Below are positions 1,153 to 22,272 of a stretch of 64,000 nt of DNA, piece by piece (positions within the stretch are counted from its first letter, which is position 1; each line of letters begins with the position of its first letter). This DNA comes from Perna viridis. Lineage: Eukaryota. Location: assembly GCA_037379345.1 (NCBI GenBank), contig CM074511.1, forward strand, positions 15,562,001-15,626,000, read 5' to 3'. The notes below the pieces were generated by a model. It was not told the DNA's origin and searched no databases. It saw only the letters and a program-made list of their open reading frames with translations. The position numbers and the translations under genes were made by a program.

Positions 1153-1200
1153 ATGGATGGGATCGCTGTAGAAGACAATGGAGAAGTAACTGTTCAAGAT
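1153..1200 (+). CDS. AT-hook gene coding exon 1 (MDGIAVEDNGEVTVQD)
   Basis: Acceptor ttttag at 1134, ATG at 1153, donor GTGAGA at 1201; phase 0. Confidence 0.65.
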
Positions 1201-1547
1201 GTGAGAGAAGGGGTTGTTAAGAAAGCTTTTAACTAAATTTCATGTTTCCTTATGAGAACAGGACATTAAAGAAATCTTAACTTATCCAAATGTAACTTAA
1301 ATGATTTGAAGTATACCTTAAAAATGATGGAAGACATCTTAACTAACTTTTATATGAATGCTGGACTTAGACATTATGATAAGATCAAAGTGAATTAATT
1401 ACTCATGAAGCAATATTTTCTGTATTCTATAACATGAAGCTTTCAATTTTAACGTGTACTTTCATTTCTCTAACAAATTTGTTAGACTATATAACTTCTA
1501 TATATGCACCACAGTACAGAAATTTTCTTGTTATATATCAAATTTAG

Positions 1548-1640
1548 GCTGAAGATTCCAACTCAATGTCATTTCACACAGAAGCAGCTGTTTCAGTAAC
1601 TGAGAAGTTATCAGAAGTATTACTCCAGGAGGCACAAGAG
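1548..1640 (+). CDS. AT-hook gene coding exon 2 (AEDSNSMSF...LQEAQE)
   Basis: tttag|GCT...GAG|gtacta; 93 nt; in frame with ORF 1566. Confidence 0.7.
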
Positions 1641-2571
1641 GTACTAATTCAACCAGAAGGATGTTTTTCACTTTTTAGGGGAATTTCACAATTTCAAATC
1701 TGGATATTACTGCTACAATTCTTTTTATTTTTCACTATATTTACTTCCGATTTTGCCAATTTCCGCTTTGTTCGTAAAGTTATCCATGATTCAAGCTGAA
1801 GTACTATTAATGTATAGACATCAGTTAGTTATCAGATATTCCCTGTGAAATAGATTTAGATAATTCATTTATGCTCTCTGAGACTGTCCCTACAAAATGT
1901 CACATTAGTTTTCTCTTGTACTGTTAACTTGTTTTACATAAAATTATATAATTGTAATATCAATTTAAAACAAAAAAACATTTAACTATTGAGAAAATTT
2001 ATGTAATAAATAGGATAATCAGTTGGTTATCATGATTAACCAAGTTTAATTGGTTGTGCTGAGAATACTTGAAAATTAAACTCATGCACAGAGCAAGTTC
2101 TATGAGTTAAATCTGGGCATTCGTTGATACTCATTATTAAGTTTGGTTATTTTTTCTTTCCAAATATTTACTTTCTCAGTATTTGTCAGAATTAGACAAA
2201 ATCATTCTGAAACACTTATTTAAATTATCCAATATTACAAAAATGGAAATAGGGTACACAGGAACATCAAATAGTTGCCCCTGTATACCCCAGCAACATA
2301 AAAGTAAACTGAAAGTGAAAACGAATCAATAAATATAGAGGCCCAAAATTCCTGACTCCAAACAGCTTTTGTATATATGCATCAACCTTCTAGATTTACA
2401 TAAATGTAAGCTGGTAGTGTACAAGAATTGTTGAACTTGAATGGTTTGTACTAAGAGTTTTACTCTGCACACTTTATAAGACATTTATTTACAATATAAG
2501 CATTTATTTAGGTTCATAGAAAGTAAACATTTTACATGGGTAGCAGCTATTGTATTTCCCTGCTTTATGAA

Positions 2572-2810
2572 CTTTATGTCTCCCCCACTTTTGTGGGGAG
2601 ACGCATTGTTTTTGTCCTGTCCATCTGTTTGTCTGTCACACTTTTGTAAGTGCAACTCCACGGGAACTACTTCACCAAATTTCAAGAAACTTTGTAGGTA
2701 GTTAGAACATGATATGTAGTTGTACATTATACCAGAAATTTGTGATTCACTGAATTTTATGGGAGTTATGCCCCTTTGAAACTTTGAAACTGGGGGATGC
2801 ATAAGTTTTT
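2572..2810 (+). mobile_element. Short HINE-like repeat, family 2 copy A
   Basis: 5' hairpin gtctcccccac-tttt-gtggggagac, TGTC-like microsatellite; similar along its length to 24071-24305. Confidence 0.65.
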
Positions 2811-2861
2811 ACAGGCAGAAAAATCTATAAATTAATAATCTAATCTTGAATATATTCTTAG

Positions 2862-2942
2862 GAGAATAATGGATTGTCAAAAGCAGAAGCCTCACCTGGA
2901 CAAGAGCCAAATACAGCAGTATCTGGAACACATGGACAAAAG
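2862..2942 (+). CDS. AT-hook gene coding exon 3 (ENNGLSKAEASPGQEPNTAVSGTHGQK)
   Basis: ttcttag|GAG...AAG|gtatgg; 81 nt, open in phase 0. Confidence 0.7.
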
Positions 2943-3445
2943 GTATGGATTATTTCACTAAGTTGCACTGGTTCTTAACTTGAAATCTTCTTGTGATTAA
3001 CAAACTAACTCATAAGAATGCTGTAAAATTACAAATACAAAAATGTATTTTTGAGGTAAAATTGTAAGTTCCATTGCTTTGTTCAAAATAAGATACTGAT
3101 TGAATGTGTGTTTTACATTTATGAATGACAAAGTCATACCGGTATTACATAACAAATAAAAGGGGCAAGCCATTAATTAACAAAAATTTCCACTCCTCAA
3201 AAATGATGCACATAAACATATAAATACAGTATTCCAGAATTTCAATTTTCTACCTTCTGTTGGAAATTCTTACATAAAAATCACCAGAGCAAAAACTTAC
3301 AAATAATTCTTTTCATTGACTGAATAAGTAGACAATAACAGTACACTGACTTGATATTAAACTGATAGGTTTAGGTTTAGAACATCTACAAAATACAAGG
3401 CTGTGCTGAGCATTTTCACTGATTTGAACTGAATTTGTTAATCAA

Positions 3446-4354
3446 TTTTTTAGCTCACCTTGCCAAAGGCCAGTTGAGCTATTACCATCACTTGGCGTCC
3501 GTCGTTGTCATCGTCAACGATTATACAAAACTCTTCTCCTCTGAAACTACTTGTCTAATTAGAACCAAACTTGGTATGAATGTTCCTTGGGGTATCCTGC
3601 ATAGAACTGATATGGGGATTTTTGATTCGTCAAAAAGCATGGCCGCCTTCACTAAAAATAGAACATAGGGATCAGACAGTAGTTTTTTTGCATATATCTC
3701 CTAAGCCATTAGGTTTAGCTGAATTCTGAATGGGTAAAAGTGTTTTGCATGATGTTTGTTTGTTGGGGTTTAACATCCAAGCATGATGAGATCTATCTCT
3801 GGTCAAATTTTGGTTTTAATCCGTTAGGCCATGTTGGAGTTGTTGCCCTTTTTCAACGATTTTTGCTATTTTTAATGTTATTTCTTTCCAAAATCTTCTC
3901 TGACACTACTTGACCAATTGAAACCAAACTTGGTATGAATGTTCCTTGGGGTATCACTGCATAGAACTGACATGGGGATTTTTGAAAAACATGGCCGCCG
4001 TTACTAAAAATAGAACATAGGGGTCAGACAGTAGTTTTTCGCATATATCTCCTAAACCATTAGGTTTATCCAAATTCTTTCAATAGCTGAAATGATCCAT
4101 ATTATTAGGACTGCAAGTTATCAGACTCCTTGTAAGAGTTATTGCCCTTGAAAGGGGAAAATGACTTCTTTTTTTTTTTTTTAAGTTTTCAGTCAATTTC
4201 TTGAAAACTATGATAGATTAAAAGAAACTTTCAATTGTTGAAAAGATCTTGTGATAGTCCTACCAAAGACTTCTTTAGTCAAAATTGTTGGACAACTTCT
4301 TGTCTAATTTAATTCAGGAAGGTGAGCGATTCAGGCTCCTGGGAGCCTCTTGTT
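3446..4354 (+). mobile_element. Non-autonomous Helentron/HINE (pearl-like) element, copy 1
   Basis: 5' TTTTTAGCTCACCT, 3' subterminal inverted AGGTGAGC followed by hairpin AGGCTCC-TG-GGAGCCT, short CGTC-like microsatellite, internal tandem repeats, T-rich flanks. Confidence 0.8.
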
Positions 4355-5402
4355 TGTCAAGTTGGTTCACCGTTAAATGAAAAATTTAAGATAAATATAT
4401 GGTTTGAACAAGTAAAACACTGTTTATTAATTGAAGCAAGTGACATCCATTCAAAACAATGTAACATTTGTGGTATGGCAACATGAAGTTATATTCAGTT
4501 GGGGACAATTCATCATTTTTAGATCTGTTCAAATAGATAGTTTGCAGTATAAATCGTGTATAGCATTCTGAAATTTTCAATATTTATATGAGTATTTTTG
4601 TACATTTTGCTTACAATAAGAGGTAGTTAATAACGATTCTATCACCCTGAATTTGATGTTTAAGGGAAGAGACAAAAAAATTCTTCAACCCATTCAATAC
4701 ATATCTACTGGTATCATTTCATAGATTTAAAAACAATTGTTGGACTAAACCTGAAAGTAAAGAGACTTGGCAAGTTGGCTCCAGTCAGTTAAAACAGACA
4801 AGTGTGTCTATAGAATATTTTTTGTCTTTCCCAATATTTTTAGGGTCAACAGGTTATGATTTTAGTTGGTTTTTGTCAAATTAAGGTTATGCCTTGCCTT
4901 GAAAGTAAATTTTTACTGCAATTTTTATTAGTTGATGAAAAAATATACTATTTTGCTGTACCTGTTAATGTTTTTTTTTTTTTGGGGGGGTGGGGGTGGG
5001 ATAGCTGCATTCTGCCCTGTAATGACAATGTGAGGTTTTCCTTGTCATCTTTGATGACCCATGGGTTGCATTGACCTGACATTTTTCATCCAGGTGGGGT
5101 TGTTGTCTCTTTGACATATTTATTATTTCCATTATCCTTATATTAACCTTTTTTTGGGGGGCCTTTGAGGATATCAACTTGATATTGCAACTTTTTATTT
5201 TTGCCATGGGCTCTCTGTTCAGCATGTTTTCCATAACAAGGGACTTATTCACGACTTTAATCTTCCAATATATTTTCTTCATCTGGAAATTAGCGGAAAT
5301 TAATTGTTCACAATCATCAATTTAGAATGTGCCATTTTGTGGTTCAACAGTGTTCACATTTCATTATTGTTGTAAGAATGGTAATATGCATGTTTTTAAC
5401 AG

Positions 5403-5465
5403 GCACCTGAACCTGTGGTTGCAGGAAGGGGGAGACCTAGAAAATCTGATGCTCCCAAAAAACTG
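5403..5465 (+). CDS. AT-hook gene coding exon 4 (APEPVVAGRGRPRKSDAPKKL)
   Basis: tttaacag|GCA...CTG|gtaaga; 63 nt; canonical AT-hook GRGRPRK. Confidence 0.85.
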
Positions 5466-6527
5466 GTAAGATATCTATTTGTTTTGCTAAATGTTTGTTG
5501 TAAGACAAAATCAGTTATTGTTTAAGTACATGTAAGGTTTGTACCATGCACAGGTGCTTTTAACCTTTAAGCCTTACACAAATTCTGAAGGTATAGAATA
5601 AAAATAAATGTTTTCTATTTTATTTATAAAGAAACAGTTCTTAATTTGTATGTGGTAGTATGGAATAGTTGCTGTAATTCTGTCAAAAACACCTATGGAC
5701 ACCTAATCTGTAGGAAGCTTTCATTAATGGATGTAAACTTTTTCTCACTTTTGAGACAATGATTTCCTTATTTTTAGCCATGTGAGATTAAAAGCTTCAT
5801 TTGTAACAGCAGCCCTGTGATATCTTGTAAATACAGTAAAATGTGGAAAACAGTGCATTCTAAATTGGCATACTTATCATAAAATTGATTTTAAAAGTGA
5901 GAAAAAGTAGTGCCAACTGGAAGTGTAAGGCTATGGTATGATTTAGTTGTTCTCTAATTTAACAAAGCCTTTTATAGAGGTCTTTATAACTCTTAACCTT
6001 TGAGTTTCTTTGATTCCTTAAGCTTGCATGATAGTGGAGTTAGATTCTTAATACATTGTATCTTGTTCTGAAGATATGAAAAAGTTTATATAGTGTGATA
6101 CACATATACTGTAGTTAAAACTATCTTGCAAATATTTCCTTCATGGCCATGCCTTTTCACCAACTTCATTTGAAACTTGGTATCTATGCATGATTTCTCT
6201 CTAAATTTGATGTTCTTAATAACATAATTTTGTCAGCTATTTTAGTTTGTGTTATAGTTCTTGATTTCTTCAGTTTTGCATACAGATTTTGTGTCTTTAT
6301 ATCCTTTGTTTCCTTCTAAATATCTGAGGTTTAGGGTTACCTTGAAACTATTTTGTAGATGGGATCCCGTCATTATTTAACTTCAAACAACACTTACTGT
6401 TATATGGTTTTTATCCTAACAGGACTGAGCAGGACATCAGGTATGTATAAACATACAGTTTTGTCTTGTACAAATGTATGTACAGAACTTTTTTTTGTAT
6501 TCTGATAGGTATTTTTTACATTCGCAG

Positions 6528-6584
6528 GATGAAGTTCAACAATCAAACATTGCAAGTAAAACAGATTTTATGCTAGTCACACCA
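6528..6584 (+). CDS. AT-hook gene coding exon 5 (DEVQQSNIASKTDFMLVTP)
   Basis: ttcgcag|GAT...CCA|gtaagt; 57 nt. Confidence 0.7.
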
Positions 6585-7270
6585 GTAAGTAGAACTATTT
6601 TCAGTGGTGTTATTTTTCTACATCTTCACTGATTTCTGCTTATTTAAATTCAGATTTTACTGATATAATTTTTTTGGGGGTATATTTACTTCCAATTTTG
6701 ACAACAATACTTCCATGTTGTCCATATATCTCATAGCTTTGTCCATCAATTTCCTGTATCATTTTAAGAAGTTTCTTAATTATGAGAAGCCTGGTTCAAC
6801 TATAAATATGCTGAAAAAAAGCTAAAGAATACATTCACTTCTACCCAGAACATGTTAATATCATATTCATTTTACTGATGATTTTGTATTAAGCTTTTAA
6901 TAGTCTTGCACCAAACATGAAGTGGCATTCTTACCATTTAAACAGGCTGAATGTGATTAATTAATTTCTATTCTTTTTTCAATTGTTCTGAAGTCCATAG
7001 ATCAGGTGTACAATCGTAAACATGTCAGTTGTGAGCACCAAGGTGTAACATTGATCTGGTATATTAATCTGTCATTATTACAACTATTTGTAATAAATAG
7101 GGTATTTTTAAGTTACAAACTAAATTTGCTGCCTTTTAATCTAGCTATTTGCAATTAGCCGTATATGTCACACTTATAACCAATTATGAGTTTGAACTAC
7201 TATATGTGAGTATGTTACAACATATGGTAAATGGGCACTCATTTGCATATTTTAATTTATTTATTTGCAG

Positions 7271-7318
7271 TCCCTAAAAAGAGGCAGAGGCAGGCCACCT
7301 AATCCATTTAAAGTTATT
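7271..7318 (+). CDS. AT-hook gene coding exon 6 (SLKRGRGRPPNPFKVI)
   Basis: tttgcag|TCC...ATT|gtgagt; 48 nt; AT-hook. Confidence 0.85.
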
Positions 7319-7784
7319 GTGAGTAAACATATTGTCCAAGATAGTTTGATGTATCAAGATAAATCAAAAGGCCTTAATAAGAGATTCATCATTACTATGG
7401 GTTGATACTAACAAACTTACATACAGTATGACTTTAGTTATGAGCTTAATTATTTGATTGGGACATTAAAGTTATAGTGCGAGAACTTTGTTCAAGATAA
7501 AAAAATAAAATGATAGGAAGATTTTGTTAAAATATTAATTATACAGACTTTTAGGAATCTGTGGACTATAACAGATTACAGGTAACCCTAACTAAACTGA
7601 GTTTGTTTACATGGCTCAGAAATTTGAAATATTCAGTAGCACATTTTTGAGCATTAGTCTATGCCTTATTATATAAAGACTTAAGTACAGGGTCTTCATA
7701 AAATAACAATATGTGTTCATTATTTAAATAAAACAAATGTCTTCTTTTCTCTTAAGATTTTTGTCATGACTTTTTATATTCCAG

Positions 7785-7838
7785 AGACCGAAACCAGAAA
7801 CGACAAGATCAGTTGGCAGACCAAGAATACATCCTCCA
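7785..7838 (+). CDS. AT-hook gene coding exon 7 (RPKPETTRSVGRPRIHPP)
   Basis: ttccag|AGA...CCA|gtaagg; 54 nt; AT-hook. Confidence 0.85.
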
Positions 7839-8523
7839 GTAAGGCTTAAGTCATAGATCGTTAGACTACATTTACCTTCATCTATTAATAGATTCTAATA
7901 ACTTGAGAAAGCAGTGATTTCAGATATGCATTCTATTCATTAAATCACATTGAGTGATGATGTTTTAAATATTCAAAGTTTCACATTCACTATGCTATTT
8001 ACTTATTGCAAGTATTGTTGTTTAAAAAAAAAAATTCTTCTTTATATACCCCTATTTATTAGAGTTGGGGTTGTCACATGTGTTGCAATCACCTTTTCTG
8101 TCTGTCAGTTACACTTTCTATAAAAGACATTTCAGCTTTTGGAGGGAATGCTTAGATGTTTGATATATCACTTTTGCATGAAGACTTGTATTGTGTCTTC
8201 CCATTACAAATTACAAGTTCCTTACATATCTACTTCCTGTTTACGATATTTGACAGACATGGTTGAGTAGGATGTTTTTAGCAGGATGTAGTGTGCAATA
8301 TATCATTTCCATTGCAAAATAGTACTACATTAACATGTTATTATACTCAGAAAAAATGTTGAATTTATTTCACTTCAACATTAGTCATCTATATTATATG
8401 CTTTTTAATCAACATCTTGAATATAATTTTTTTAAATATTGTTTTTCTTTTTATATTTGTCACTCTTCTTCATCAAATATTTCTGACTGGTAGGAATATA
8501 TTTATTTTATATTTTTCCGTTAG

Positions 8524-8577
8524 AAAACACCAAGTGGCCGTGGACCTGGTAGACCCAGAATTCACCCTCCTAAAGAT
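8524..8577 (+). CDS. AT-hook gene coding exon 8 (KTPSGRGPGRPRIHPPKD)
   Basis: ccgttag|AAA...GAT|gtaagt; 54 nt; AT-hook; shares GRPRIHPP with exon 7. Confidence 0.85.
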
Positions 8578-9097
8578 GTAAGTCCTTGAAAATCAATGAC
8601 AGGGTTAAATTTTGCACAGCATAGAAGTATGGAAAGTAAATACATGTAATTACATGTACTGTATAATCAAAAAAAATTTTGCTATTGTATGAATGTGAAA
8701 ACACAACTGACTTTTAATTTGTAATAGATTTAAACTTGCAATATGGAATAATTAATATAATTAATGCAGGATTTTTCTCAAATTTGTTCAAAACTAAATC
8801 CACAATTATAGTAAAGTGACAAAAAAGCAACAATTTCTAAGATAACTTCCATGAAGAAGTGGTCAGTGGGTAATTAACTTGTTTTAAAAATACTGGTTCA
8901 GTGTTGTAACTTTTCTCACATTTATACATTATAGTTTTATCCAATGAGTTCCACCTTTAATAATATCTTCATTGAGTCTAAAGACCTGTATCCCAGTACA
9001 CTATAACATACTGGTAAATATGTCTAAATACTTTAGAGTAGTTAACCAGCATTTACAATAAGTATTACTTTGAACTTGTTTGATATTTTTTTTTCAG

Positions 9098-9133
9098 ATT
9101 GGTACGAAAAGATTTGCTAGACCTTTTAATATG
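9098..9133 (+). CDS. AT-hook gene coding exon 9 (IGTKRFARPFNM; degenerate hook)
   Basis: tttttcag|ATT...ATG|gtaaga; 36 nt. Confidence 0.65.
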
Positions 9134-9475: not shown

Positions 9476-9939
9476 TATATCTGAAGTTTACTTTCCAACT
9501 CTGATACTAATGAGAAATTGATCAGGCCTCTAAATACAAGAATACCAATCATAAAGATATTGCAAATTTCTGTATGCTGTACATGTGTTTCAGTAGCATT
9601 AGAAGTAAAGCCTTGAAAGTTTAAGATCCAAAAATATATTGTACAAAGAAAGAACTAGAAACAAAAAAATAGTGAAATGGGAAGCCAATTTTAGCACTGA
9701 TTCGCACTCACCTGATATTAGTAGCATATGTATGTGTAATGGTTTGATCGCAATCTGTTTGTTGATGGAAGTCTTGAAAGGCTAAAAAAAAATATGATAC
9801 CAATTTCAATGCATATCTATAAAAGGCTACTGAATAATATTATTCTTGAATAATTCTTACATGAGTTGAAGTGGGTGATAACTTGACAACTTGTCGAAAA
9901 AAATATCCATTTAGCATAAAAAAATAAAGAAGGCTGAAA

Positions 9940-10266
9940 CTGACATTAGTGAATCTTCACCTTTGGCCAAGGCATACATATGTTTGTCTGTGATATATAC
10001 TGACATTAGTGAATCTTCACCTTTGGCCAAGGCATACATATGTTTGTCTGTGATATACTGACATTAGTGAATCTTCACCTTTGGCCAAGGCATACATATG
10101 TTTGTCTGTGATATACATTAGTGAATCTTCACCTTTGGCCAAGGCATACATATGTTTGTCTGTGATATACATTAGTGAATCTTCACCTTTGGCCAAGGCA
10201 TACATATGTTTGTCTGTGATATACTGCTATGGTCAAGGTATACATATGTTTGTCTGTGATATACTG
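9940..10266. repeat. Minisatellite, 54-60-bp unit, ~5.5 copies
   Basis: cattagtgaatcttcacctttggccaaggcatacatatgtttgtctgtgatata repeated. Confidence 0.95.
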
Positions 10267-10299
10267 CTAATTGTTATTCTTACTTTGATTTTATTTCAG

Positions 10300-12018
10300 A
10301 AGTCCCTCCAAATAAAAGTGAAGTGTACTCAGAGAGGTGACAGAAGACGTGGTAGACCTCCAGGGTCCAAGAACAAGAAAAAAAATTATATTGTGCCAAA
10401 AGTTCACCAACCTCCAGGAAGACCTATTAAGTCTGAGAATGAGAAAGAATCTATGAGCTATCAGGACTTTGTGCGTCAAGTAAATGAGGAACTTCTGGCC
10501 ATTCATGGTACAATACCAGGAATAAACAAACAAATTGAGGGCGCAATAGAAGTTGATAATACCAGTGATGATTTGGACTCAAATTTAGAGTTAGATGAGC
10601 CTACAGAAGATAATCCTATTTCAAAAAGTTTGCATTTAAATGTATCTACTGAAAATAACCTTCCATTGGAAAAACATAGGGGAAGACCACCTGGTTCTAA
10701 AAATAAACCAAAGGATTTTGACACTTCTGGTTTAGATTTGGAATGCACTAGTATACCAGCAACATTTCCTTCAGGCAAAAGAAAAGGAAGACCTCCTGGA
10801 GCTAAAAATAAACCAAAAGATATTTTTGTCTTAACAAGTGACTCTGAAAATAATTTAAGTGCTTCTCCATCTATCAAGAAAAGGGGTAGACCACCTGGAG
10901 CTAAAAATAAACCAAAGGAAATAAGCTTCCTTGGTAGTGATTTTGAAAACAATAGTCCTTCTCCACAAATTAAAAAAAGGGGAAGACCACCTGGAGCTAA
11001 AAATAAACCTAAAGATTTCTCTTTTCTGAAATCTTATTCAGGTGAGTCAGTAATTGGATGTAGTCCTTGCCCTACAGAAAAGCGACGACCAGGAAGACCA
11101 CTTGGATCAAAGGACAAATTTTCCTCCGGGAGGAGACGAGGTCGACTTCCTGGTGCTAAAAATAAGTTGAATTTTAGTTTTACTCGTACAGAAGTTGATC
11201 AATCCTCTGCTGATGAATCAAGTCTAAAATTAGATTTCTCACCTGTGAGGAGACCAGGAAGACCTCTTGGAGCTAAAAATAAACCAAAAAGCCTTAGTTT
11301 TAATGAGCATAATACAAGTGTAAATTCACATTTACGAATTCTCTTTAGATCTCCCTCTCTCAAGCGGAAGCCAGGGAGACCACCATTGGCTGAAAATAAA
11401 CATAAAAGTGATACATCAGACCAAGACCACCAAGTGAACACTTCTTTTTCACTCTCTGGTAAACGCAGACCAGGAAGGCCTCCTGGTGCCAAAAATAAAC
11501 CTAAACCAGAATATTCATCAGAGGAGAATAATGATGAAAATTTAAAAACACTAGTTTCACCATTAGGGAAAAGAAGTCCTGGACGTCCCCCAGGTGCTAA
11601 AAACAAACCTAAGCTGGATTTTGAGGTTAAGAATGAAGGTTATGGAAACATTTCTTTCTCTCATCAAGTTAAACGAAGACCTGGTAGACCCCCTGGTGCT
11701 AAAAATAAACCGAAGTTAATTTATTCAATGGACACAAAATCTGAACTGACAGAAGGTGAAAATGAATTGAGTTCAGAGCCATCATCACCAACTAAGAAAA
11801 GGGGTAGACCTCCAGGGTCCAAGAATAAACTGAAATTAGCACTTTCTCCTCAAATGTTTGTGAAAATGGATACTGGTGAGATCAGTGGTGTGTTTGACAA
11901 TAGTGTTTTAACCTCTTCAGGCAAGAGACGGCCAGGCCGACCGCCTGGTGCTAAAAATAAACCGAAAATATATAGCTGGGTGAAGATAGATAAAGAGTCT
12001 CGTGCCGTTACAGACCAG
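10300..12018 (+). CDS. AT-hook gene coding exon 10 (573 aa, 15 AT-hooks)
   Basis: Core of ORF 10081-12030; tttcag|AAG...CAG|gtttgt; repeated (K/R)RxGRPPGAKNKPK. Confidence 0.92.
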
Positions 12019-12869
12019 GTTTGTATATGACAAGGTGTTAACACTAGATTGCTAAATTTAAATGTACCTTTGATTTTTCATTAACTGCAGAACTACATAG
12101 AGAAGTTTAAGTGTACTGATTTCTTATTCTTAAGTGGAGCAAAATGTCAGAACAGTAAAATATGTTATTATATATGTATGCTCATGTTTATACACAAAGA
12201 AATATGCAAACATGTTTGCTAGCAAAAAGTTTCAGATCTGGTAAGAACTTCAGCAGGGTAAAAAAAATATGGAAATATGGTAAAAAGAGAAATGAAATGT
12301 TTTCTCAATCTCAAACGTAAACTGAAAGAGCATTATTTTTTTCTTACTTAGGTCATACAAATGTATGTGTAGGTTCTCAGGCCTGTTTTTTTTTTTGTTT
12401 TGTTTTTTGTTTTTTTGTGGTTTTTTTTGGTCAGAAGAAAATAGACAAAACGTTTCTGTGAGTAATATTTATTATCACACAGTTCAGAAACTGTGATTGT
12501 GGGAGGGTAAGTTTATGATACTCTATGGCATCAAGATCTTCCTAGAGAAATAATTTTGCACGGTTTTAATATACATGTCATATATCTGCTGAAGCGTTTT
12601 GAACTTTCCTGCCAAGTGCACAAACAATCTCAATGACAAATTAATAAAACTGAAACCGTTTTCCAGAACAGACACCAAAAAAAAATCAGGATTTTAAAGT
12701 TTTTTTTGTTTTTTATTTTGTCATATAATAAAGATCAGGAGTGTTTTAACGATGCAGAGGTGCCTGAAAACCTACACTTTTTTATTTAGCCTTACATGTA
12801 AGATTAAAATGTACATAAATATACATAGTTTCCTTAAGTTTCATTGTATAGAAATTACTTAATTTTCAG

Positions 12870-13157
12870 ACCCCTAAGATCAAAAGGAAACCAGGTAGGC
12901 CTCGTGGGTCTAAGAATAAAATTCCTTGTATTGAAGCAGATGAAATAAAACCAAGACATTGTAAAAGTGACACAAGCTACACAGAAGTTGTGGAAAATGT
13001 TGTAGAGGAGGAGTTTTCTGAGAGTGAAGAAGGGGAGAATGACACAGAGGTTCAGAAAAGAGGCCCAGGGAGGCCGTCAAAGAATAGAGAATCAACAATC
13101 AAAAGGAAGAGGGGGCGGCCACCAGGATCTCTCAATAAAAAGAAGAAATTAAGTGGT
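12870..13157 (+). CDS. AT-hook gene coding exon 11 (96 aa, 3 AT-hooks plus acidic patch)
   Basis: ttttcag|ACC...GGT|gtaagt; KRKPGRPRGSKNK, KRGPGRPSK, KRKRGRPPGSLNK. Confidence 0.9.
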
Positions 13158-14100
13158 GTAAGTTTCTTTCATATAAGAACACCTGTCTTGAAGTTTGTTT
13201 TATGACATTAAATGCTATGACATATTTACCTGAACATCTGACTAGCTTTAGAAATTAAGTTTTTCAGAATTAAAAGATGTTTATATGTTATAGTGAATAA
13301 TATATGGTCAGGGAATTGAGTATGTCTTCCCTTGATCAAATGCCTAGTACCTGACGAAGTATCTTAGATATTTCACTGGATAATTGAAAGGGAGATATTT
13401 CATAGGTATTAGTTTGTTAGAAAGTTGAAATCCCTTTGCCAGTTGTTAAATACCTAATGATGTTGTTGTCTTTTAATTAATGGAAGTCCAACTCTATTTC
13501 CAGAAGGCATTTGTTCCTTATTCTTTCTTTTATTTGAACCTTTTTTTATTACAGATATTATTAAGCATTCTAATATGATGTCCTTAACAGGCTTTGAGAC
13601 TACTACTGTGGCCGATTTTCGATTGCTATATAAGCATCACACGACTTGGGCTTGGCTTGAGTTTGTGTAAATTAATGCCCACCTTAATCATGTAAACAAA
13701 CATACGTAACATTCAAATGTGTATCAGCTGTTTTCATTCATTTCAGTAGCATGAATGAACATCTAATTCATATTTAATAAAAATATTAAAAGTTATATGT
13801 TTTAGAAAAGTTATATTAATTGTAAAAATCACTTACACACATACTTGGTAGCATTTGCCACATGCGCCATGATGTATGAAACCAAACAATAACAATCGTC
13901 AATGAATGACTTAAGTTGTACTTAATTCCCCTTTCCTTCATTATAAAAAACACAAGGCAAAGTTTCTCTAGAGACCAATTCAGCTGACATGGCTAGTGTA
14001 AAGTGTACAGCCAAATATGAAAAAAGGTGGGCTCAGGTTACCGTAATAGGTCACAAAAAATGTTAAAAAGTGCCGTTATTGTCCTTTTAGAATTTAAGTA

Positions 14101-14225: not shown

Positions 14226-14345
14226 CATTTCTTAATCTGCATATTTATTATATTCCCAAGTGGGGGTATATAGTGATATGGGTGCCTTTACTTCTGTCCA
14301 TCCATCCATCCTTCTTTCTTTCTTTCCTTGTTAAACAGAGGCACC

Positions 14346-14511
14346 CAGAGGTTTCATTATTTTTTAGCAATGCATGTACCTTTGAATTTGTAGGAGGTAC
14401 TTTTCATAATTTTTTTTAATAAAAATGTATGAAATTTTGAAATTCTGGAGGTACCTTTCAGCAGTTTAGATGGGTAAAAGTACCTGGTACCGCCTCTTAA
14501 TGAAAGGCCTG
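14346..14511. mobile_element. Small CAGG-ended (hAT-like) MITE inside a decayed HINE-like repeat (~14245-14880)
   Basis: Ends cagaggtttcatta / taatgaaaggcctg; internal ggaggtac repeats. Confidence 0.4.
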
Positions 14512-15450
14512 GTCACCAATCTGTTATACGTAACTCCTCCTACACCACTGAATTATATGAAATTTCCACAGATTCCTTATTTAGTATTGAAATATGTGCA
14601 TCTTCTGTTTTAGACTTTGATCTGAAGTTTTTATAGGTCTCACATCAGCATACGTACACTTTATAATTCCCTGATTTGGGATACCAATACTCATCTCTTA
14701 TCTGTAATTCATTCTACACAACCGAATGGAATTTAATGACATTTTCATAAATTCATTATTGCATATTACCATTAAACACCTTTTTTTTATCCAAATCAAT
14801 TTGAAGGTCAAAGGGTGCATGTTATAAAATTGGGGGATTGGGGTATCAATTTAGTGAGCATTGCTCACAGTATTTTTCATTCAGATTTTATTCACTTTCA
14901 GTTTCTAGTAAACTACCATGTGTAAGACACAAGGTTCTAACAAATTGCATTGGTTTTCTCTAGACAGATTTTCACTTGCACTTTGATTTAAAAATGGGTT
15001 AGAGAAAATTTTTTGTTATAGTCCACAAATTATTAAATATTCTTAGTTATAAAAGTACTTTTTTCATTCTGTACATGTACCCAGTAGAAAATTATTCAAC
15101 CTTCTCATTCAATCCTAGTTGTGGTCTGGTTTGTAATGAAAAACAGTGTAAGTTATTGTAAATTAGTGGTAATTTTGTTAATGTACACTGATAATCAAGG
15201 TTTACAGAACCCATGATACATGACTCCTGTCTAACACGGTCAGCTTCAATGCATTTTGAACCTATGGTAATGAATCACTTGCCTTAACTTACAAATCTTT
15301 GAGGGGCTGTGTTTACACATGGCCACACTTTGTCATGAAAATAGACATGTTCAAATAATTTTTTGGGATATATTTGGGTCATAGACCATTGCAGATTTAG
15401 GCTGCTAAAGTGTTCTGGAGATCCAAAAAAAATATAATTCCTATTTTCAG

Positions 15451-15564
15451 AGTTTGGTTCCAGTTCTATACAACATATCTCCAGAAACTTACCATGTGCC
15501 TACTGTAAATCAGCCCTCAGCAACTGTTACAGTATTTGCACCAGAAATTGTCGAAGGCATTATG
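15451..15564 (+). CDS. AT-hook gene coding exon 12 (SLVPVLYNISP...VEGIM)
   Basis: ttttcag|AGT...ATG|gtaact; 114 nt; overlaps ORF 15454 in frame. Confidence 0.65.
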
Positions 15565-16647
15565 GTAACTGAATTCAATTTTTGGCCAAAGCATCTATTT
15601 GTTTTCTTTTTTAGATTAATGCATTTTGTATGTGGTTACTAATTTGAAGGCATATTGAAATTAAGTGAGGCTCGTGTGTTTTGTTATTTAACTTTCCCAT
15701 AATCAGAAAATCGTATCAAACTTCTAAATTTATGATTGAAAATCAAAATCATTTAAAAACACCTCATGTGTTATTGTCACTGACTACAACTACATGTATC
15801 ACATTTTGTGGCTTTTGTCACTGAAGCAATAAATGATAAAAAAAACAAGGTTATTGTGCAGATTCATTTCTATGACTACTATTTATACAACAACCCCATC
15901 GTCAGATGACAACTCTTTACCCCTTTTCTGTCCAATTTGAAGATATTCACACTTCTTGGCTTACATGTATATCTCAGAAATAATAACTGATAGACAGGTA
16001 AATGTGCAGAACAAATAGACTGAAGATGTACGTTAGCTTCTTCTTGGAGTTACATGTATTGCCCTTTCCTTTAAATGATTGTCAATTTTTTAAACTTTTT
16101 TTACTGTTTACCAAAAAATTGTAACAAATTTATAAAATGTTAACAGGAAAGTATTCATCATGATGAGGGCTACTATGCTTCTACTGGGTCTGAAGATGTT
16201 TGACGACTCTTTGGAGGTGTCATTGACCTTTCTCTTTCAAAATTGATGCTTTGTACTAGTGATATTTAACGATTTGCACATTTTTAGCTCACCTGGCCAA
16301 AGGTCATTTGAGCTATTGCCATCACTTGGCGTCCATCGTCATCATCATTAACAATTTTTCAAAACTCTTCCCCTATAAATGTTCCTTGGGGTATCCCGCA
16401 TAGAACTTATGTTGGGATTTTTGATCCGTTGTAAAACATGGCCGCCATTACTAAAAATAGAACATAGGGGTCAGACAGAAGTTTTTCGCATATATCTCCA
16501 AAACGGTTAGGTTTAGCCAAATTTTGATGGGGTAAAAGTGTTCAGCATGATGAGATCTATCTGCGGTCAAATTTTCATTTTAATCTATTTAGCCATGTTG
16601 GAGTTATTGCCGTTTTTCAACATTTTTTGCTATTTTTTATGTTATTT

Positions 16648-16701
16648 CTGGATTACATTCTTCTGATTACTGCTATAACCTTGGTTCCCTTGATTACTCT
16701 T
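16648..16701 (+). mobile_element. 54-nt 3' tip of the Penelope-like element
   Basis: 52/54 identical to 54083-54136. Confidence 0.9.
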
Positions 16702-17189
16702 TCAAAAATCTTCTCGTCTGACACTACTTGACCAATTGGAACCAAACTTGGTATGAATTTTCCTTGGGGTATCATGCATAGAACTGGTGTTGGGATTTTT
16801 GATCTGTCGAAAAGCATGGCTGCCGTTACTAAAAATAGAACATAGGGGTCAGACAGTAGTTTTTCACATTTATCTCAAAAACAGTTAGGTTTAGCCCATT
16901 CTGAAATGGGTAAAAGTGTTCAGCAGGTCAAATTTTCATTTTAATCTATTAAGCCATGTTGGAGTTATTGCCCTTTTTCAAAGGTTTTTGCTATTTTTTA
17001 TGTTATTTCTTTCAAAAATCTTCTCCTCTGACACTATTTTACCAATTGAAACAAAACTCAGTATATATGTTCCTTGGGGTATCCTGCGTAGAATTGATGT
17101 GGGATTTTTTTTTATCCGTCGAAAAACATGGCCACTGTTACTAAAAATAGAACATAGGGGTCAGACAGTAGTCTTTTTTATTTTTTATT

Positions 17190-17683
17190 TGATCTGGCGA
17201 CAAAAATAACCAGTTGGCGATTTTCATGGCACCTAGGTTTTGTATATTAAAATTGACATGAAGTTTGTCAGCAACAGATCAATATTCTCTCCAATTAAAC
17301 AATGGTGTTGACACCTGGTCAAAGTTAATTAATAATATAAAGTCCTTGATAGAAAAAAAAACCTGTATGTTGAGTAGTACTATATTATTTTGCATATAAA
17401 AAGTGACTAATGGTTTTAGATCGTGACTAAGACTAGAGCTAAAAACCTGCTTTATACATATATCAAGAGTGAATCTTGGGTACATGTATGTCATAAATGA
17501 AGGGTTATTTTGATGAATTGACAAAGATAACTCATCACTGGACTTAATACTGTCATATTTTAAAAAATTAGATAAAAAAATTTTTGGCACTCATTTTGGC
17601 TCTAATTTATGAAAATTTGCGACAAAAATTGGCAGCTGGCGATTTTTCTGGCGACAGAATTTTGAAAGCCAGAGCAGCCCCTG
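17190..17683. mobile_element. One-ended hAT-like DNA transposon fragment nested in HINE copy 2
   Basis: Ends gagcagcccctg (CAGGG terminus); duplicated gcgacaaaaa...tggcgatttt subterminal motif; replaces part of the host element. Confidence 0.5.
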
Positions 17684-19755
17684 GAAAATGACAGGTTTTT
17701 TTTTTTTTTAGTTTTCAGCCAATGTCTTGAAAACTATGATAGATTTAGACTTTCATTTACTGAAATGATCCTTATGATAAGTCCTATCAAAGTTTCCATG
17801 AGTCAAAATTGTTGGACAACTTCTTGCTTAATTTATTGCCCTTGAAAGGCAAAATTCAACAAGGTGAGTGATTCAGGCTCCTGGGAGCCTCTTGTTTGGT
17901 TTATAAAATAAGTTAACAAAAAATGACTGAACACTTATTGATCCATAATCAAGTCAAGTCAAAGATAAATCTGGCAAAATAGAAACAGCCATGTTTAAAT
18001 TTGACTCCATGTTGAAGTTTTCCCTTTTCTGTAAAAGTTGACAATTTCAAAATTTAGAGATTATAACTAAAGAATTATAATAGTAAGAAAGCAACTGTGA
18101 AATGGAGAGTTCATGAGATTAACAGGTTATCCATACAAGACCCAGGTAGTGGGTGGCACATGCCAAATGTTGTTTTCAAAATATATTCATTTATTTAAGG
18201 TCACAAACTCATGTTTTCTTAAAAATTTGATGTTGTTATGTAATTTACTGAAATGATAAGAATAAGATAAATTACAAAGAAAGCACTACAAAATTTATAA
18301 TAAAAGGAAATAATTTAGGTATGATCTGTTCATGATTTAGCTGATTTGTTAGGGAACTTTGAAGATATATTCTTAGTCATCCACTATTGATACAGAAAAA
18401 TTCCAGTTCTTCCTGTCATCATAATGAGTTAAATATTACTTTGGAAAAAAATTAGTGGGATAAAATTAACCCTGTGCCACCCATGTCATAAGATCTGCCT
18501 GTTTATAACTCAGAAAGAAATGGAGAAGATGTGGTAAAATTAATGTAACTTCACAGAATTATAACAAATGGCTACAACTTTTTTTATATTTGGTCATAAC
18601 TATTGCTGTTATGATTTACTAAAATTCTCACTGATTGCATGATGTTTTGTAAAACAAAGGATTAGTACCTCTGGTTCCCCTATTTTTATTTTACTTTACT
18701 ACACACTTAACAACCGTGTTGTATGATTTCATTTAATTGCCATATTAAAATCCCATTCATACATTTTAATACCATGGACCTTTCGTTAAGTTTTGAACCT
18801 CTTTATTTAAAAAAAATATAAACACAATGAATTTCATCACTTTTATTTTAATACATTATAACCACAGTAATGACCTAACTTAATAATCCAAATTTAATAT
18901 ATTACATGTACTTCAATGTATGAAATATTAACATATCTACATTATGTTAGGTAGAAATCTTGTGATCATCATATATTGCATTTCATCTCATCAATTTTTT
19001 TTAATTGTATCCTATGCCAGATGCAATGGAGTTTTAGAAGCAAGCTTTCTGAAATGCCTACATTGGGCGAGTAGACATAGTACATGTATTGGTTATCATG
19101 GTATTAATTGTTGACTAGACTAACCTTGATTGTTCTACTTTTGTATGAAATTTTCACCACACCATTTGCTATATATATAATTTTAGGTGAAGAAATAATT
19201 TTTCTCTAGTGCATTGAAGATACTGCTAAAGGTTATAGATCTATCATAGCCTTATTTTGTTGCACAATCATTTTTGCTCTTAATTTTGGTTTCACTAATT
19301 CTTGATCATATTTTCAACAGTATGTTAGATACAAACCATACAATTATCAAGTAATGCATTTCATTTCATGATCTTTTTTATAATTGTGTCACATGCCAGA
19401 TGCAATGGGATTTAAAGTTGCTTAAAAATGCCTTTTTTTTTTTTTTTGCTAATACGCATATTTATCTCGTGTGTTGGTAATCAAAGGAGTAAGATTTTGA
19501 ATAGATTAATTCATATTTCCATTTACATCACAATATTCACTATGGACAATTTTCGATGGAACTTTTTTTTCCTATGATGAATGGAAGTTACTATAAATAG
19601 ATCTGTTGTATACATTGATACTACTTAAGATTATACACCAGTCATAGAATTATTTTTGTTACACTGTCGTTATTCAGTTTGATTTCAATTATCCTAATTA
19701 AGGTCAGTGATTGTGACATGAAATGAAAGGAAATTTATGATTATTTACTATTTAG

Positions 19756-20352
19756 GAAGAAACTACTAGCCCAATTCAACAGAAGCCAACCACTGGTAGA
19801 AGACAGAAAACTCCAATAAACTATGCTGCCATGGCTGAGGGCGCCTTGTTAACTGATAGTGACATGTCAGAGGATGAAGGAAAAAAAGGCACACAACCTG
19901 AGACTGTGGTAAAGGTATCTGTGATCACCAGTGCCTCTGAAACAGATTGGAAATCAATGCAAGAAAAAACTGTTAACCCTGAAAATAGCAATCTCATTAA
20001 AAAAAGGGGGAGGGGTAGACCAAAGAAATCAGACCAGACAAAGAGGCCAGGTAGACCAAAGAGTATAAAAACAGACACTTTTGACCTCACTTTAGTTGAA
20101 GATGTATCAGATACTGAATCTAGTGGTGGAAGCAAAGTTCAAAAGAAAAAGTTGGGTAGGCCAAAAAAGGTTGATTCTTATCTGAACATGACTGGTGATG
20201 AAGAGCAAGAATATGATCCCTCTGGAATCAGTGGTATAACCATGGAGGGATGGGAGGGATTTACTGGTGCAGCTAAGGAAGGTACAAGTTTATGTAATGG
20301 TACAGTAAAGGATCCAGCTAGTGTCTCAGCCAAACTGTCTGTGTCAGATCAG
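19756..20352 (+). CDS. AT-hook gene coding exon 13 (199 aa, 3 AT-hooks)
   Basis: tttag|GAA...CAG|gtaact; KKRGRGRPKK, KRPGRPK, KKLGRPKK. Confidence 0.9.
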
Positions 20353-20783
20353 GTAACTTACATATGTAAAATTAGTTCATATGAATATCAGAAGACTTTC
20401 ACCTATTTGCCTGGTTATGTCTGATGAATTATTACTTACTATGCCTTCAAACTGGAAATTTTCTGTGCTTCTTTCAAAATGTTATCATTATACCTACAGT
20501 TCTATACAGCCCATGCATAATTAGAGAATATGAATTAAGTATGAGAAGAAAAAAAAATTATAGAGATTGAAGCAAAATTGGGGAAACATTTGAACTAAAT
20601 CAGGTTTTTTTTAAACTATTCAGAGTTTAAATTTAAAGCATTCAAATTCAACTTTTACCTTACTTGAGCAAAAGTTAGATGCTAAAGGTACTGAATGACT
20701 TATCTATGATTACAGGAGATTTATGTAATGATGTTCCTTTCAGTTTATTTGTTACTGATAATGCACATTTTGTATGATTTCAG

Positions 20784-21350
20784 CCAAATTTACATTCTTT
20801 CGATACAGCAACTAAAATTAGTGACACTAGAAATGAGAAGAGAAAGACATCAGCTGTTGCATTTGTGGATGATGTAGTTATAATTGACTCAGATTCAAAT
20901 GATAAATTTGAATCAGTAAATGTTGAAAACTCAGACACTACTCCAGATGTTATCGTGAAGAATAAAGTGCCAGAAGCGGGAAGTTTTTGTTCAGTTGTTG
21001 ATCTGTCAAATTGTGAAAGGGAAAGTTCCCTCCAAAATGGCAAAGAAGGAAATGAATTAAATTATGCTTCATCAAATCAAATCAACTCTAGTTCACTACA
21101 GCCTGTCATCTCCACAGACACTTTTCGAAGTGTTGCCTCAGTTTCAAATCATCTTGGAGAAAAGTCAGTTGTAATAGACAGTATGCCTTCGACAGTAGTT
21201 GATATTATGCTAACATCTGAACCAGCTTGTTCCTTGAAGAATGAGGTAACTGAAAATTCTGAACAGAATGAGGTAACAGTAACAAAAATCATTACAGAAT
21301 CTTTGCCACAGAATACAAATTCAGGCCTAGCTTCTTCATTGTTTGTTAAT
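20784..21350 (+). CDS. AT-hook gene coding exon 14 (189 aa, acidic/Ser-rich, SIM-like motifs)
   Basis: tttcag|CCA...AAT|gtaagt; in frame with ORF 20865. Confidence 0.85.
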
Positions 21351-22257
21351 GTAAGTTTTTTTTTCAACTAATTTGGTTGATACATAGGGGTTATAAGAAC
21401 AAAAACAACAATTGTAATTAGTAGACTAAAGCAGTTAAGTTTTAGTCCTACTCATGCTTATTCAGCCTCTTAATTTAGTCAGTTTTATGTAGATCTGAAA
21501 TTGCAACTCATTTTATTTTTTGCCAAATACACACCCTCTCAACAAACAAAGGACTTTCAGTTTAGACAGGAATTTAATCCTTGGGATTGTTTGATAGGCT
21601 GAATCTTACAGTTTATTTAGATTTTTGATTTTGAGTACCATTTCCATATTGGTTTGCATTGAGGTCCTAAAGGTCTGAAATTAGTGTGATTTCTACTTAA
21701 ATTGAATTCTTGAGGTTCTGTAATATGCTGTTCTAACTATACATGTATATTTAGATTCTGATTTTGAACATTTCTAATTTTTAAGTTCCACACACTTATT
21801 TTGTGTCATTAACATATGCTATGTCAAAAATTTAAGCATTATTAAAATTGAGAGTTGTACAGAGCTTAACTATAGTGTCAGTTCTGGCCCAAATGCTTCA
21901 GTGTTTTAACTGTAGTCATATCAAGCTTTGCCCCATAAAATAATTTTTTTGAAATCTTACTAATTCCTGTTACTAGCCAATCATATTTTAAATGCTCGAA
22001 AAGGGAAGTTAACAGTAGAGAAATCTGCTAAGGGAGTATCTGATAAACTATGGATCCCAAAACAATTCTGCAAGATGGTGTAAAATGAGTTTTTGGCTTG
22101 TTAACTGACTCCCAACTTCTGCCATTTTATGACATTACAGTGGAATGTGTGAATAGTGAGATCAAGGTACTCTGAGACTAACTGGGGATATGATAGTGTA
22201 TTTTTTTTTCAGGAGTGTTTCAAATTTTACCTGTCTCATATTATAAATTTATTGCAG

Positions 22258-22272
22258 GCTCCCATGTCTTAG
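22258..22272 (+). CDS. AT-hook gene terminal coding exon (APMS-stop); alternative in-frame acceptor at 22213
   Basis: attgcag|GCT CCC ATG TCT TAG; T-rich UTR-like sequence follows, AATAAA at ~23028 and ~24600-24630. Confidence 0.55.
   Translation, partial: APMS

What the first reader, a model, noticed from the sequence alone, without database searches (positions are those of the whole stretch)
1153..22272. Giant ~25-AT-hook HMGA-like gene in which all 14 introns are phase 0: a possible splice-tunable DNA-binding valency system
Seen: coding exon lengths 48, 93, 81, 63, 57, 48, 54, 54, 36, 1719, 288, 114, 597 and 567 nt are all multiples of 3 with AG/GT ends at codon boundaries. Hooks are distributed 1, 1, 1, 1, 15, 3, 3 over exons 4, 6, 7, 8, 10, 11, 13. 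For hook exons the frame is fixed independently by the motif. Known: about half of animal introns are phase 0, so 14/14 is ~1e-4 by chance; HMGA2 also has one hook per symmetric exon (recalled, verify), but HMGA has only 3 hooks and Drosophila D1 about 10. Inference: any subset of internal exons can be skipped in frame, so isoforms could range from a small HMGA-like protein to a 25-hook scaffold with or without the SIM module. Caveat: manual model building favours in-frame joins.
Basis: partly seen in the sequence, partly recalled or inferred. Interest (0 to 1): 0.82.

Follow-up and report, generated by a model that had tools for sequence, protein, structure and literature searches.

The report
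Giant 25-AT-hook chromatin protein gene
This is a real single-copy animal gene for a very large, mostly disordered DNA-binding protein with 25 AT-hook motifs, built from exons that all start and end on codon boundaries. That layout is explained well enough by module duplication, and the idea that splicing tunes the number of hooks could not be tested.

Summary
**The hooks are real.** [RKP]GRP occurs 22 times in the six-frame translation, against 0.85 expected. All 22 lie on the + strand between 5427 and 20047.

It has 15 exons, 14 introns and about 1277 aa, with hooks distributed 1, 1, 1, 1, 15, 3, 3.

**Phase 0 holds for 11 introns.** In the seven hook exons the motif fixes the frame. Two exon homologues on metagenome contigs from unidentified relatives are also phase 0-0, with very different hook numbers (5 vs 15, 9 vs 3).

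**Eight exons remain unproven.** These are the non-hook exons 1, 2, 3, 5, 9, 12 and 15, plus the donor of exon 14. Equally good decoy exons exist nearby.

**Best reading.** This is a lineage-specific, fast-evolving multi-AT-hook protein that works like Drosophila D1 or HMGA1 without being a member of either family. The phase-0 symmetry is probably a legacy of module duplication. Splice-tunable valency is permitted by the structure but unsupported.

The parts
1153..1200 (+). Predicted exon 1 (ATG, 48 nt). Unverified.
   Evidence: ATG preceded by an in-frame TGA; donor GAT|gtgaga. No transcript or conservation evidence.
1548..1640 (+). Predicted exon 2 (93 nt, acidic). Unverified.
   Evidence: AG/GT ends and open frame. 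Donor matches only 5 of 9 consensus positions.
2862..2942 (+). Predicted exon 3 (81 nt). Unverified.
   Evidence: Strong-site open pair with hydrophilic composition.
5403..5465 (+). Exon 4: one AT hook, phase 0-0.
   Evidence: In-frame stop at 5397-5399. The only other AG would cut into the hook. Donor CTG|gtaaga.
6528..6584 (+). Predicted exon 5 (57 nt, no hook). Unverified.
   Evidence: Good sites, but decoys of equal quality lie nearby, e.g. 6359-6475.
7271..7318 (+). Exon 6: one AT hook, phase 0-0.
   Evidence: Acceptor tttgcag|, donor ATT|gtgagt.
7785..7838 (+). Exon 7: one AT hook, phase 0-0. Duplicate of exon 8.
   Evidence: Acceptor attccag|, donor CCA|gtaagg. Shares the GRPRIHPP core with exon 8.
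8524..8577 (+). Exon 8: one AT hook, phase 0-0.
   Evidence: The in-frame stop codon supplies the acceptor AG. Donor GAT|gtaagt.
9098..9133 (+). Predicted exon 9 (36 nt). Unverified.
   Evidence: Pyrimidine tract 0.8, donor ATG|gtaaga. It is one of five 36-nt AG..GT open segments in that intron.
9939..10269 (.). Intronic minisatellite (54-nt unit, about 5 copies) ending about 30 nt before the exon 10 acceptor.
10300..12018 (+). Exon 10 (1719 nt): 15 AT hooks, 13 of them canonical GR[PL][PL]GxK[ND]K units spaced 32-44 aa apart. Also a conserved helix at residues 54-70.
   Evidence: Acceptor and first residues (KSLQI..VKCT) are conserved in a relative's contig L001. Donor CAG|gtttgt; the alternative donor at 11979 is also phase 0. 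In hook-core codon pairs, 298 differ synonymously against 82 non-synonymously. Single copy in the genome. Its 31-mers are held in full by contigs of 14 small-assembly runs from 4 studies. Helix pLDDT 83-91.
   Evidence: I sent no query holding these letters to any search tool afterwards. Locus L002, which fetched automatically, spans them and was not used.
12870..13157 (+). Exon 11 (288 nt): 3 hooks plus an acidic stretch, phase 0-0.
   Evidence: Acceptor ttttcag|, donor GGT|gtaagt. Internal paralogue of the exon 13 module.
15451..15564 (+). Predicted exon 12 (114 nt, no hook). Unverified.
   Evidence: Good sites, but 42% hydrophobic residues and no conservation evidence.
19756..20352 (+). Exon 13 (597 nt): 3 hooks and two conserved motifs (..Y.AMAEG and ITMEGWEGF), phase 0-0.
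   Evidence: An in-frame TAG supplies the acceptor, the same arrangement as in relative L006. Donor CAG|gtaact, 8 of 9.
20784..21350 (+). Exon 14 (567 nt): acidic (net -14), with 3 SIM-like hydrophobic cores. Acceptor in phase 0.
   Evidence: A 197-codon open segment fixes the frame. Donor AAT|gtaagt. SIM-like matches occur only in this exon. AlphaFold2 pLDDT is under 50 throughout. If the donor is not used, the stop is at 21369-21371.
22258..22272 (+). Predicted last coding exon (4 codons plus TAG). Speculative.
   Evidence: Acceptor ttattgcag|. An alternative acceptor at 22213 is also in frame. Poly(A) signals at 21841 and 23028.

Best explanation
The region holds one single-copy, multi-exon gene on the + strand. 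Its product is large (about 1100-1300 aa), almost wholly disordered and strongly basic, and carries 25 AT hooks.

Layout of the protein:
- Four hooks sit on their own 48-63-nt exons, the way HMGA genes carry theirs.
- Fifteen hooks lie in one 1719-nt exon built from repeated units of about 33-40 aa.
- Three hooks lie in each of two acidic-basic modules (exons 11 and 13).
- The protein ends in an acidic region with SIM-like motifs.

Likely mechanism (inferred). [quoted passage not shown] The S/T-P sites just upstream of 7 of the 15 exon-10 hooks offer phosphorylation control of binding, as is known for HMGA.

Origin of the phase-0 pattern. The uniform phase-0, length-divisible-by-three exon structure is most simply the trace of how the gene grew: by duplication of hook modules that can only be copied in frame, starting from an HMGA-like one-hook-per-exon layout. 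It need not be a device for isoform control.

Shown here: the motifs, their selection-maintained cores, the splice-site geometry, single copy, conservation of two exon borders in relatives, and predicted disorder. Inferred: DNA binding, bundling, phospho-regulation and SUMO interaction.
For: - Hook enrichment is 22 against 0.85 expected, all on one strand and inside the gene.
- Hook-core codon pairs differ synonymously 298 times and non-synonymously 82 times, so the cores are kept by selection and are not recent copies.
- Tandem units of 96-99 nt lie inside exon 10. Exons 7 and 8 are duplicates. The exon 11 and exon 13 modules are alike.
- Two exon homologues from unidentified relatives are also phase 0-0 but with other hook numbers. 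L001 is 498 nt with 5 hooks, against 1719 nt with 15 here. L006 is 1062 nt with 9 hooks, against 597 nt with 3 here.
- No folded domain was found. Pfam gives only a sub-threshold AT_hook match. AlphaFold2 shows disorder apart from one conserved helix.
- Exon 10 is single copy in the 723-Mb assembly.
- Exon 10 is held in full by contigs of many small assemblies, which the tool guesses to be RNA.
- HMGA hooks lie on separate exons, and exon 4 of HMGA2 encodes 11 aa (PMC7353061, PMC11291832).
- D1 has 11 hooks, and its hook number and net charge govern chromocenter partitioning and coalescence (bioRxiv 10.1101/2025.08.07.669059; PMC5957525).
Against: - No transcript junctions were seen, so eight of the fifteen exons, the true start and the true stop are unproven.
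- The predicted full-length net charge is about +50 (summed exon by exon). That is far from the near-neutral charge that the D1 preprint finds necessary for coalescence.
- No DNA-binding or localisation data exist.
- No homology to D1 or HMGA outside the hooks was recognised among the 70 hits of the 1.84-billion-protein search; only six of them were read.
Absence of close relatives is therefore weak evidence of lineage restriction.
Confidence: 0.6

Rival explanations
1. One reading: the all-phase-0 layout is used as a regulated system. Tissue- or stage-specific skipping of hook exons yields isoforms from a small HMGA-like protein up to a 25-hook scaffold, with or without the SIM-bearing tail.
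For: - Every hook exon is 0-0 symmetric, so any subset joins in frame.
- Skipping exon 10 alone would leave 10 hooks and a net charge of about -2 instead of +50 (summed exon by exon). That is close to D1's 11 hooks and neutral charge, the two parameters that the D1 preprint (10.1101/2025.08.07.669059) finds decisive.
- HMGA1a and HMGA1b differ by an in-frame 11-aa splice variant (PMC7353061).
Against: - There is no junction evidence of any kind.
- Most hook-exon splice sites look constitutive.
- Duplication history explains the symmetry without any function.
- Same-phase symmetric runs are noted in many other genes of this genome (unchecked notes).
Confidence: 0.15
2. The model merges two or more genes, or includes false exons. 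For example, a small N-terminal HMGA-like gene (exons 1-9) could be separate from a large gene starting near exon 10, or exons 13-14 could belong to another transcript.
For: - Eight exons are unverified and decoy exons of equal site quality exist.
- Introns 11 and 12 are long (2.3 and 4.2 kb) and carry dispersed repeats.
- A possible upstream micro-exon in relative L006 cannot have a phase-0 acceptor.
Against: - Exon 10 starts at a strong acceptor that is conserved in a relative, and has no start codon before residue 52.
- Exons 4-9 contain no stop codon.
- Exons 11 and 13 are paralogous modules with hooks of the same kind.
- All hooks lie on one strand within 15 kb and none elsewhere in the 64 kb.
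- The 10 kb upstream of the window holds a retroelement-like block (gag zinc knuckle, integrase-like frame) and no further multi-hook exons.
Confidence: 0.12
3. The protein is not a repeat-DNA bundler. It would instead be a general AT-rich or scaffold-DNA coating factor, or a germline-specific chromatin protein such as a sperm or oocyte packaging protein, where high positive charge matters more than hook valency.
For: - Net charge is about +50 with 116 K+R in exon 10 alone.
- Relatives diverge fast and differ in hook number, as is common for reproductive chromatin proteins (general knowledge).
Against: - Hook cores are under strong purifying selection as specific motifs, not only as charge.
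- Regular 32-44-aa spacing, a conserved helix and conserved non-basic motifs point to specific interactions.
Confidence: 0.13

Closest known systems
Drosophila D1 chromosomal protein (multi-AT-hook satellite-DNA bundler)
   Same: Both carry many AT hooks spread along a disordered protein, with hook groups alternating with acidic stretches. The likely action is multivalent minor-groove binding of AT-rich repeats (PMC5957525; 10.1101/2025.08.07.669059).
   Different: This protein has 25 hooks against 11 and about 1277 aa against about 355. Its predicted net charge is about +50 against near neutral. The gene is multi-exon with four single-hook micro-exons. No sequence similarity outside the hooks was found. 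It has a C-terminal SIM-like cluster.
Vertebrate HMGA1/HMGA2
   Same: Hooks of the RGRP and GRP.GSKNK types, hooks on separate small exons, an 11-aa in-frame linker exon or splice variant, an acidic C-terminal part, and S/T-P sites next to hooks (PMC7353061, PMC11291832; CDK phosphorylation of HMGA is from general knowledge).
   Different: HMGA has 3 hooks in about 100 aa. Here 21 of the 25 hooks lie in three large exons. The C-terminal part is 189 aa with hydrophobic SIM-like cores, not a short acidic tail. That all HMGA2 introns are phase 0 is my recollection and was not verified (the primary paper PMC307378 is not held).
Synthetic multi-AT-hook (MATH) proteins and other natural hook arrays found here (P0001, P0033, P0035)
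   Same: Tandem GRP.GSKNK units separated by spacers of about 30 aa.
   Different: The natural examples read here couple 6-9 hooks to other regions: a Cys/His-rich C-terminus (Pfam PF00628, PHD) in P0001, a JmjC-like protein in P0035, and an unannotated 500-aa N-terminal part in P0033. This protein has no recognised folded domain.

Membership tests
AT-hook motif (Pfam PF02178) | G-R-P core flanked by basic residues, usually R-G-R-P | tested here: met
   25 cores, of which 13 are canonical GR[PL][PL]GxK[ND]K units in exon 10.
AT-hook motif (Pfam PF02178) | Score above Pfam's gathering threshold | tested here: inconclusive
   Exon 13 scores 16.1 bits against a cutoff of 17.4. Nothing is reported for exon 10. 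The 13-position model is weak on single motifs.
HMGA family | Small protein (about 100 aa) with three hooks | tested here: not met
   25 hooks and a predicted length of about 1277 aa.
HMGA family | Each hook on its own exon | tested here: inconclusive
   True for 4 hooks (exons 4, 6, 7, 8). The other 21 hooks share three exons.
HMGA family | Short acidic C-terminal tail | tested here: not met
   Exon 14 is acidic (net -14) but is 189 aa long with hydrophobic SIM-like cores.
HMGA family | Sequence homology beyond the hooks | tested here: not met
   The search of 1.84 billion representatives with exon 10 found nothing below E = 1e-13. The only hit matching outside the hooks, among the six I read, is the metagenomic fragment P0032.
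D1-type multi-AT-hook satellite bundler | Ten or more hooks in a disordered protein | tested here: met
   25 hooks. AlphaFold2 gives low confidence everywhere except one helix.
D1-type multi-AT-hook satellite bundler | Hook modules alternating with negative regions, overall near-neutral charge | tested here: not met
   Acidic stretches exist in exons 10, 11, 13 and 14, but the summed net charge is about +50. It would be about -2 without exon 10.
D1-type multi-AT-hook satellite bundler | Binds AT-rich satellite DNA and clusters it into chromocenters | not testable with these tools
   Needs binding and imaging experiments.
Poly-SIM module (RNF4-like) | Several hydrophobic [VIL] cores flanked by acidic or Ser residues | tested here: met
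   Three regex matches (VVIID, VVDL, VVDI), all in exon 14 and none in the other 13 exons. This is motif-level evidence only; no conservation was found.
Alternatively spliced cassette exons | Transcripts both with and without the exon | not testable with these tools

The most novel reading that the evidence does not exclude
This would be a lineage-specific giant AT-hook protein whose hook number changes fast between related species (15 vs 5 and 3 vs 9 in homologous exons), possibly tracking satellite DNA. Inclusion or skipping of the single symmetric 1719-nt exon 10 would switch it between two forms: a D1-like form with about 10 hooks and near-neutral charge, suited to coalescence, and a 25-hook form with net charge about +50, suited to coating. 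The gene would then control both valency and net charge by splicing.
Probability: 0.1. Interest if true: 0.75.

Novelty: new variant of a known kind. Interest (0 to 1): 0.42.

Why it matters
Multi-AT-hook proteins such as D1 and HMGA1 are the known glue that bundles satellite DNA into chromocenters. Recent work shows that hook number and net charge set their behaviour.

A natural protein with 25 hooks, more than twice D1's count, would extend the known range of this protein class to a non-model animal. So would the large differences in hook number between related species. It would also give a test case for co-evolution between satellite DNA and its binders.

If exon 10 skipping occurs, it would be a natural experiment on the valency and charge rules derived from engineered D1 variants. 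If only one isoform exists, the gene is an ordinary though extreme repeat protein.

Tried and rejected
- **Reads.** No junction data were obtained.
- **Word-based protein searches.** Exons 10, 14 and 13 gave no annotated orthologue. They returned only window-encoded genomic ORFs (P0094, P0095) and one metagenomic homologue (P0096). The length window (0.55-1.75x) excludes a full-length protein of about 1277 aa.
- **Exhaustive representative search** with exon 10. It gave only AT-hook-level hits plus the fragment P0032.
- **Logan contig L005** is collinear with the genome at 18365-22616 and unspliced, so it says nothing about splicing.
- **Metagenome locus scan** with alignment A1. The two loci returned share hooks only.
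- **ESM Atlas**. Scores were at most 0.80, which is the level of chance.
- **Bacterial promoter scan**. It is irrelevant for a eukaryotic gene.
- **Primary HMGA2 gene-structure paper** (PMC307378). It is not held, so HMGA2 intron phases remain a recollection.
- **Joined protein.** I did not build, search or fold the joined spliced protein. All exons were handled separately by reference, so no full-length search or fold exists.
- **Retrocopy idea.** A processed copy could have revealed the junctions, but exon 10 has only one place in the genome.
Full report
**What is in the sequence**

The window is AT-rich (30-38% G+C) and contains no N. A six-frame scan for [RKP]GRP finds 22 matches. All are on the + strand between 5427 and 20047, and none occurs elsewhere in the 64 kb. 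A second-order Markov simulation of the window gives a mean of 0.85 and a maximum of 3.

With the looser cores GRP and RGR[PL], the count is 25. One hook sits at each of 5427, 7286, 7815 and 8545. Fifteen lie in the 658-codon open segment 10054-12027, three in 12852-13202 and three in 19756-20421.

I searched for AG...GT pairs of the stated lengths that are open in frame and read the ends. This reproduces the model exactly: 15 exons, given under parts, 14 introns, and a summed coding length of 3834 nt, or about 1277 aa.

I handled every exon separately by reference. The joined protein was never built, searched or folded.

**Is phase 0 forced, or an artefact of manual model building?**

In the hook exons the motif fixes the frame. 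For each one I listed every AG between the last upstream in-frame stop and the hook, and every GT between the hook and the next in-frame stop.
It lies on a codon boundary.
- In exons 8 and 13 the stop codon itself supplies the AG.
- The donors closest to consensus (gtaaga, gtgagt, gtaagg, gtaagt, gtaagt, gtaact) are also on codon boundaries.
- Exon 10 runs from tttcag|AAG to CAG|gtttgt. The alternative donor at 11979 is also phase 0.
- Exon 14 is fixed by a 197-codon open segment, and its acceptor is in phase 0.

An intron has one phase. These 14 borders therefore fix introns 3 to 13 (11 introns) as phase 0, whatever lies between the hook exons.

The same fact cuts the other way. Frame continuity cannot validate the non-hook exons 5, 9 and 12, because any 0-0 segment, or none at all, would fit. 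Under one fixed threshold there are 53 strong-site open pairs in the region, and 16 of them are 0-0 symmetric. Exons 1, 2, 3, 5, 9, 12 and 15 and the exon 14 donor therefore remain predictions.

**Independent support from relatives**

The exhaustive search of 1.84 billion representatives with exon 10 found nothing below E = 1e-13. One hit, P0032, is a real homologue of the exon's first 100 residues, with 52% identity.
- Its contig L001, from an ENA metagenome, shows a pyrimidine tract and AG directly before the conserved KSLQI..VKCT start. A donor follows 498 nt later. Both borders are on codon boundaries, and the exon holds 5 hooks instead of 15.
- The word search with exon 13 found P0096, on JGI metagenome contig L006. 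That exon is 1062 nt (214-1275). An in-frame TAG supplies the acceptor, exactly as here, and the donor is GAG|gtatgt. It holds 9 hooks instead of 3 and shares the motifs ..Y.AMAEG and ITMEGWEGF.

Two homologous exons are thus also 0-0 symmetric, and hook number differs greatly between the relatives and this genome.

One caveat concerns L006. It carries a donor-like CAG|gtgagt 94 nt upstream of the exon. If that is a real micro-exon, it cannot have a phase-0 acceptor. I could not decide whether it is an exon.

**How the gene was built**

- Exon 10 contains tandem units of 96-99 nt.
- Its 13 canonical hooks are spaced 32-44 residues apart.
- Across the hook-core codons, 298 codon pairs differ synonymously and 82 non-synonymously. 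The cores are old and kept by selection.
- Exons 7 and 8 are both 54 nt and share the GRPRIHPP core.
- Exon 11 and the start of exon 13 share one module plan: a hook, then K.R.CKS...Y, then an acidic stretch, then hooks.

Growth by in-frame module duplication accounts for a run of symmetric same-phase exons. HMGA genes already carry their hooks on separate exons, and exon 4 of HMGA2 encodes exactly 11 aa (PMC7353061, PMC11291832). That every HMGA2 intron is phase 0 is my recollection only. The scan's own unchecked notes list many same-phase symmetric runs in other genes of this genome, so the pattern is not rare here.

**Nature of the protein**

- Pfam gives only a sub-threshold AT_hook match.
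- AlphaFold2 on exon 14 gives pLDDT under 50 throughout.
- For the first 167 residues of exon 10, AlphaFold2 gives disorder except for one confident helix at residues 54-70 (pLDDT 83-91). This is the segment conserved in L001.
- Exon 10 has 116 K+R against 64 D+E. Summed exon by exon, the net charge is about +50, and about -2 without exon 10.
- Seven of the 15 exon-10 hooks have an S/T-P site within 12 residues upstream.
- Three SIM-like cores occur, all in exon 14.
- Exon 10 is single copy in the 723-Mb, 46-contig assembly.
- The 10 kb upstream of the window holds a retroelement-like block (gag zinc knuckle, integrase-like frame) and no further multi-hook exons, only one isolated GRP match.

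**Expression**

The run index shows the words of exon 10 at 0.86-1.00 in contigs of 14 runs from four studies. Those runs have total contigs of only 41-101 million letters, far below the genome size, and the tool guesses they are RNA. This suggests expression, but no holder is on record as RNA.

After that I sent no query holding those letters to any search tool. Local scripts did read the window file. Locus L002, fetched automatically, spans the place and was not used.

The Logan contig L005 that carries two window ORFs is plain unspliced genomic sequence, 18365-22616.

**Verdict**

This is a real gene with 25 hooks in which at least 11 introns are phase 0.
- It works like D1 or HMGA1, as a multivalent binder of AT-rich DNA, but it is a member of neither family.
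- The uniform phase is best explained by duplication history.
- Splice-tunable valency is allowed by the structure and remains untested.
- One piece of arithmetic gives that idea some appeal. Without exon 10 the protein would have about 10 hooks and near-neutral charge, close to D1. The D1 preprint (10.1101/2025.08.07.669059) finds hook number and net charge to be the decisive parameters.
- I rate it a new variant of a known kind, of moderate interest.

Noticed in passing
window 9939-10269: A minisatellite (54-nt unit, about 5 copies, 92-95% alike) lies in intron 9 and ends about 30 nt before the exon 10 acceptor. Its translation is open and runs into the exon 10 frame, which inflates the ORF to 649-658 codons.
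   Followed up: partly
window 3446-4311, 16374-17893, 24857-25758: A dispersed repeat with internal units of about 330 nt (80-87% alike between copies) sits in introns 3 and 12 of the gene and again downstream of it. It is probably a non-autonomous mobile element.
   Followed up: no
L007 (G000:C1:15552001-15562000), about 270-7500, + strand: A retroelement-like block lies directly upstream of the window. Its open frames include a gag-like zinc knuckle and an integrase/RNase H-like frame of 625 codons. It bounds the gene on the 5' side.
   Followed up: no
window 42722-45382, + strand: An 886-codon open frame, rich in Ser, Asn and Pro, with no Pfam match. It is probably a large exon of the next gene downstream.
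   Followed up: partly
window 32158-32600, 56419-56706 and 60116-61208: Three further minisatellites. The unit is about 33-34 nt at 32158-32600 and 60116-61208, and the last array runs for about 1.1 kb. The first produces two spurious overlapping ORFs.
   Followed up: no
L006 1-120: In the relative's contig a donor-like CAG|gtgagt lies 94 nt upstream of the exon 13 homologue. If it is a micro-exon, its own acceptor can only be phase 1 or 2. That would be an exception to the all-phase-0 pattern in that species.
   Followed up: partly
window 10459-10509 (exon 10 residues 54-70): This is the only confidently folded element, an amphipathic-looking helix conserved in the relative L001. It may be a protein-protein contact or self-association site inside the hook array.
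   Followed up: partly
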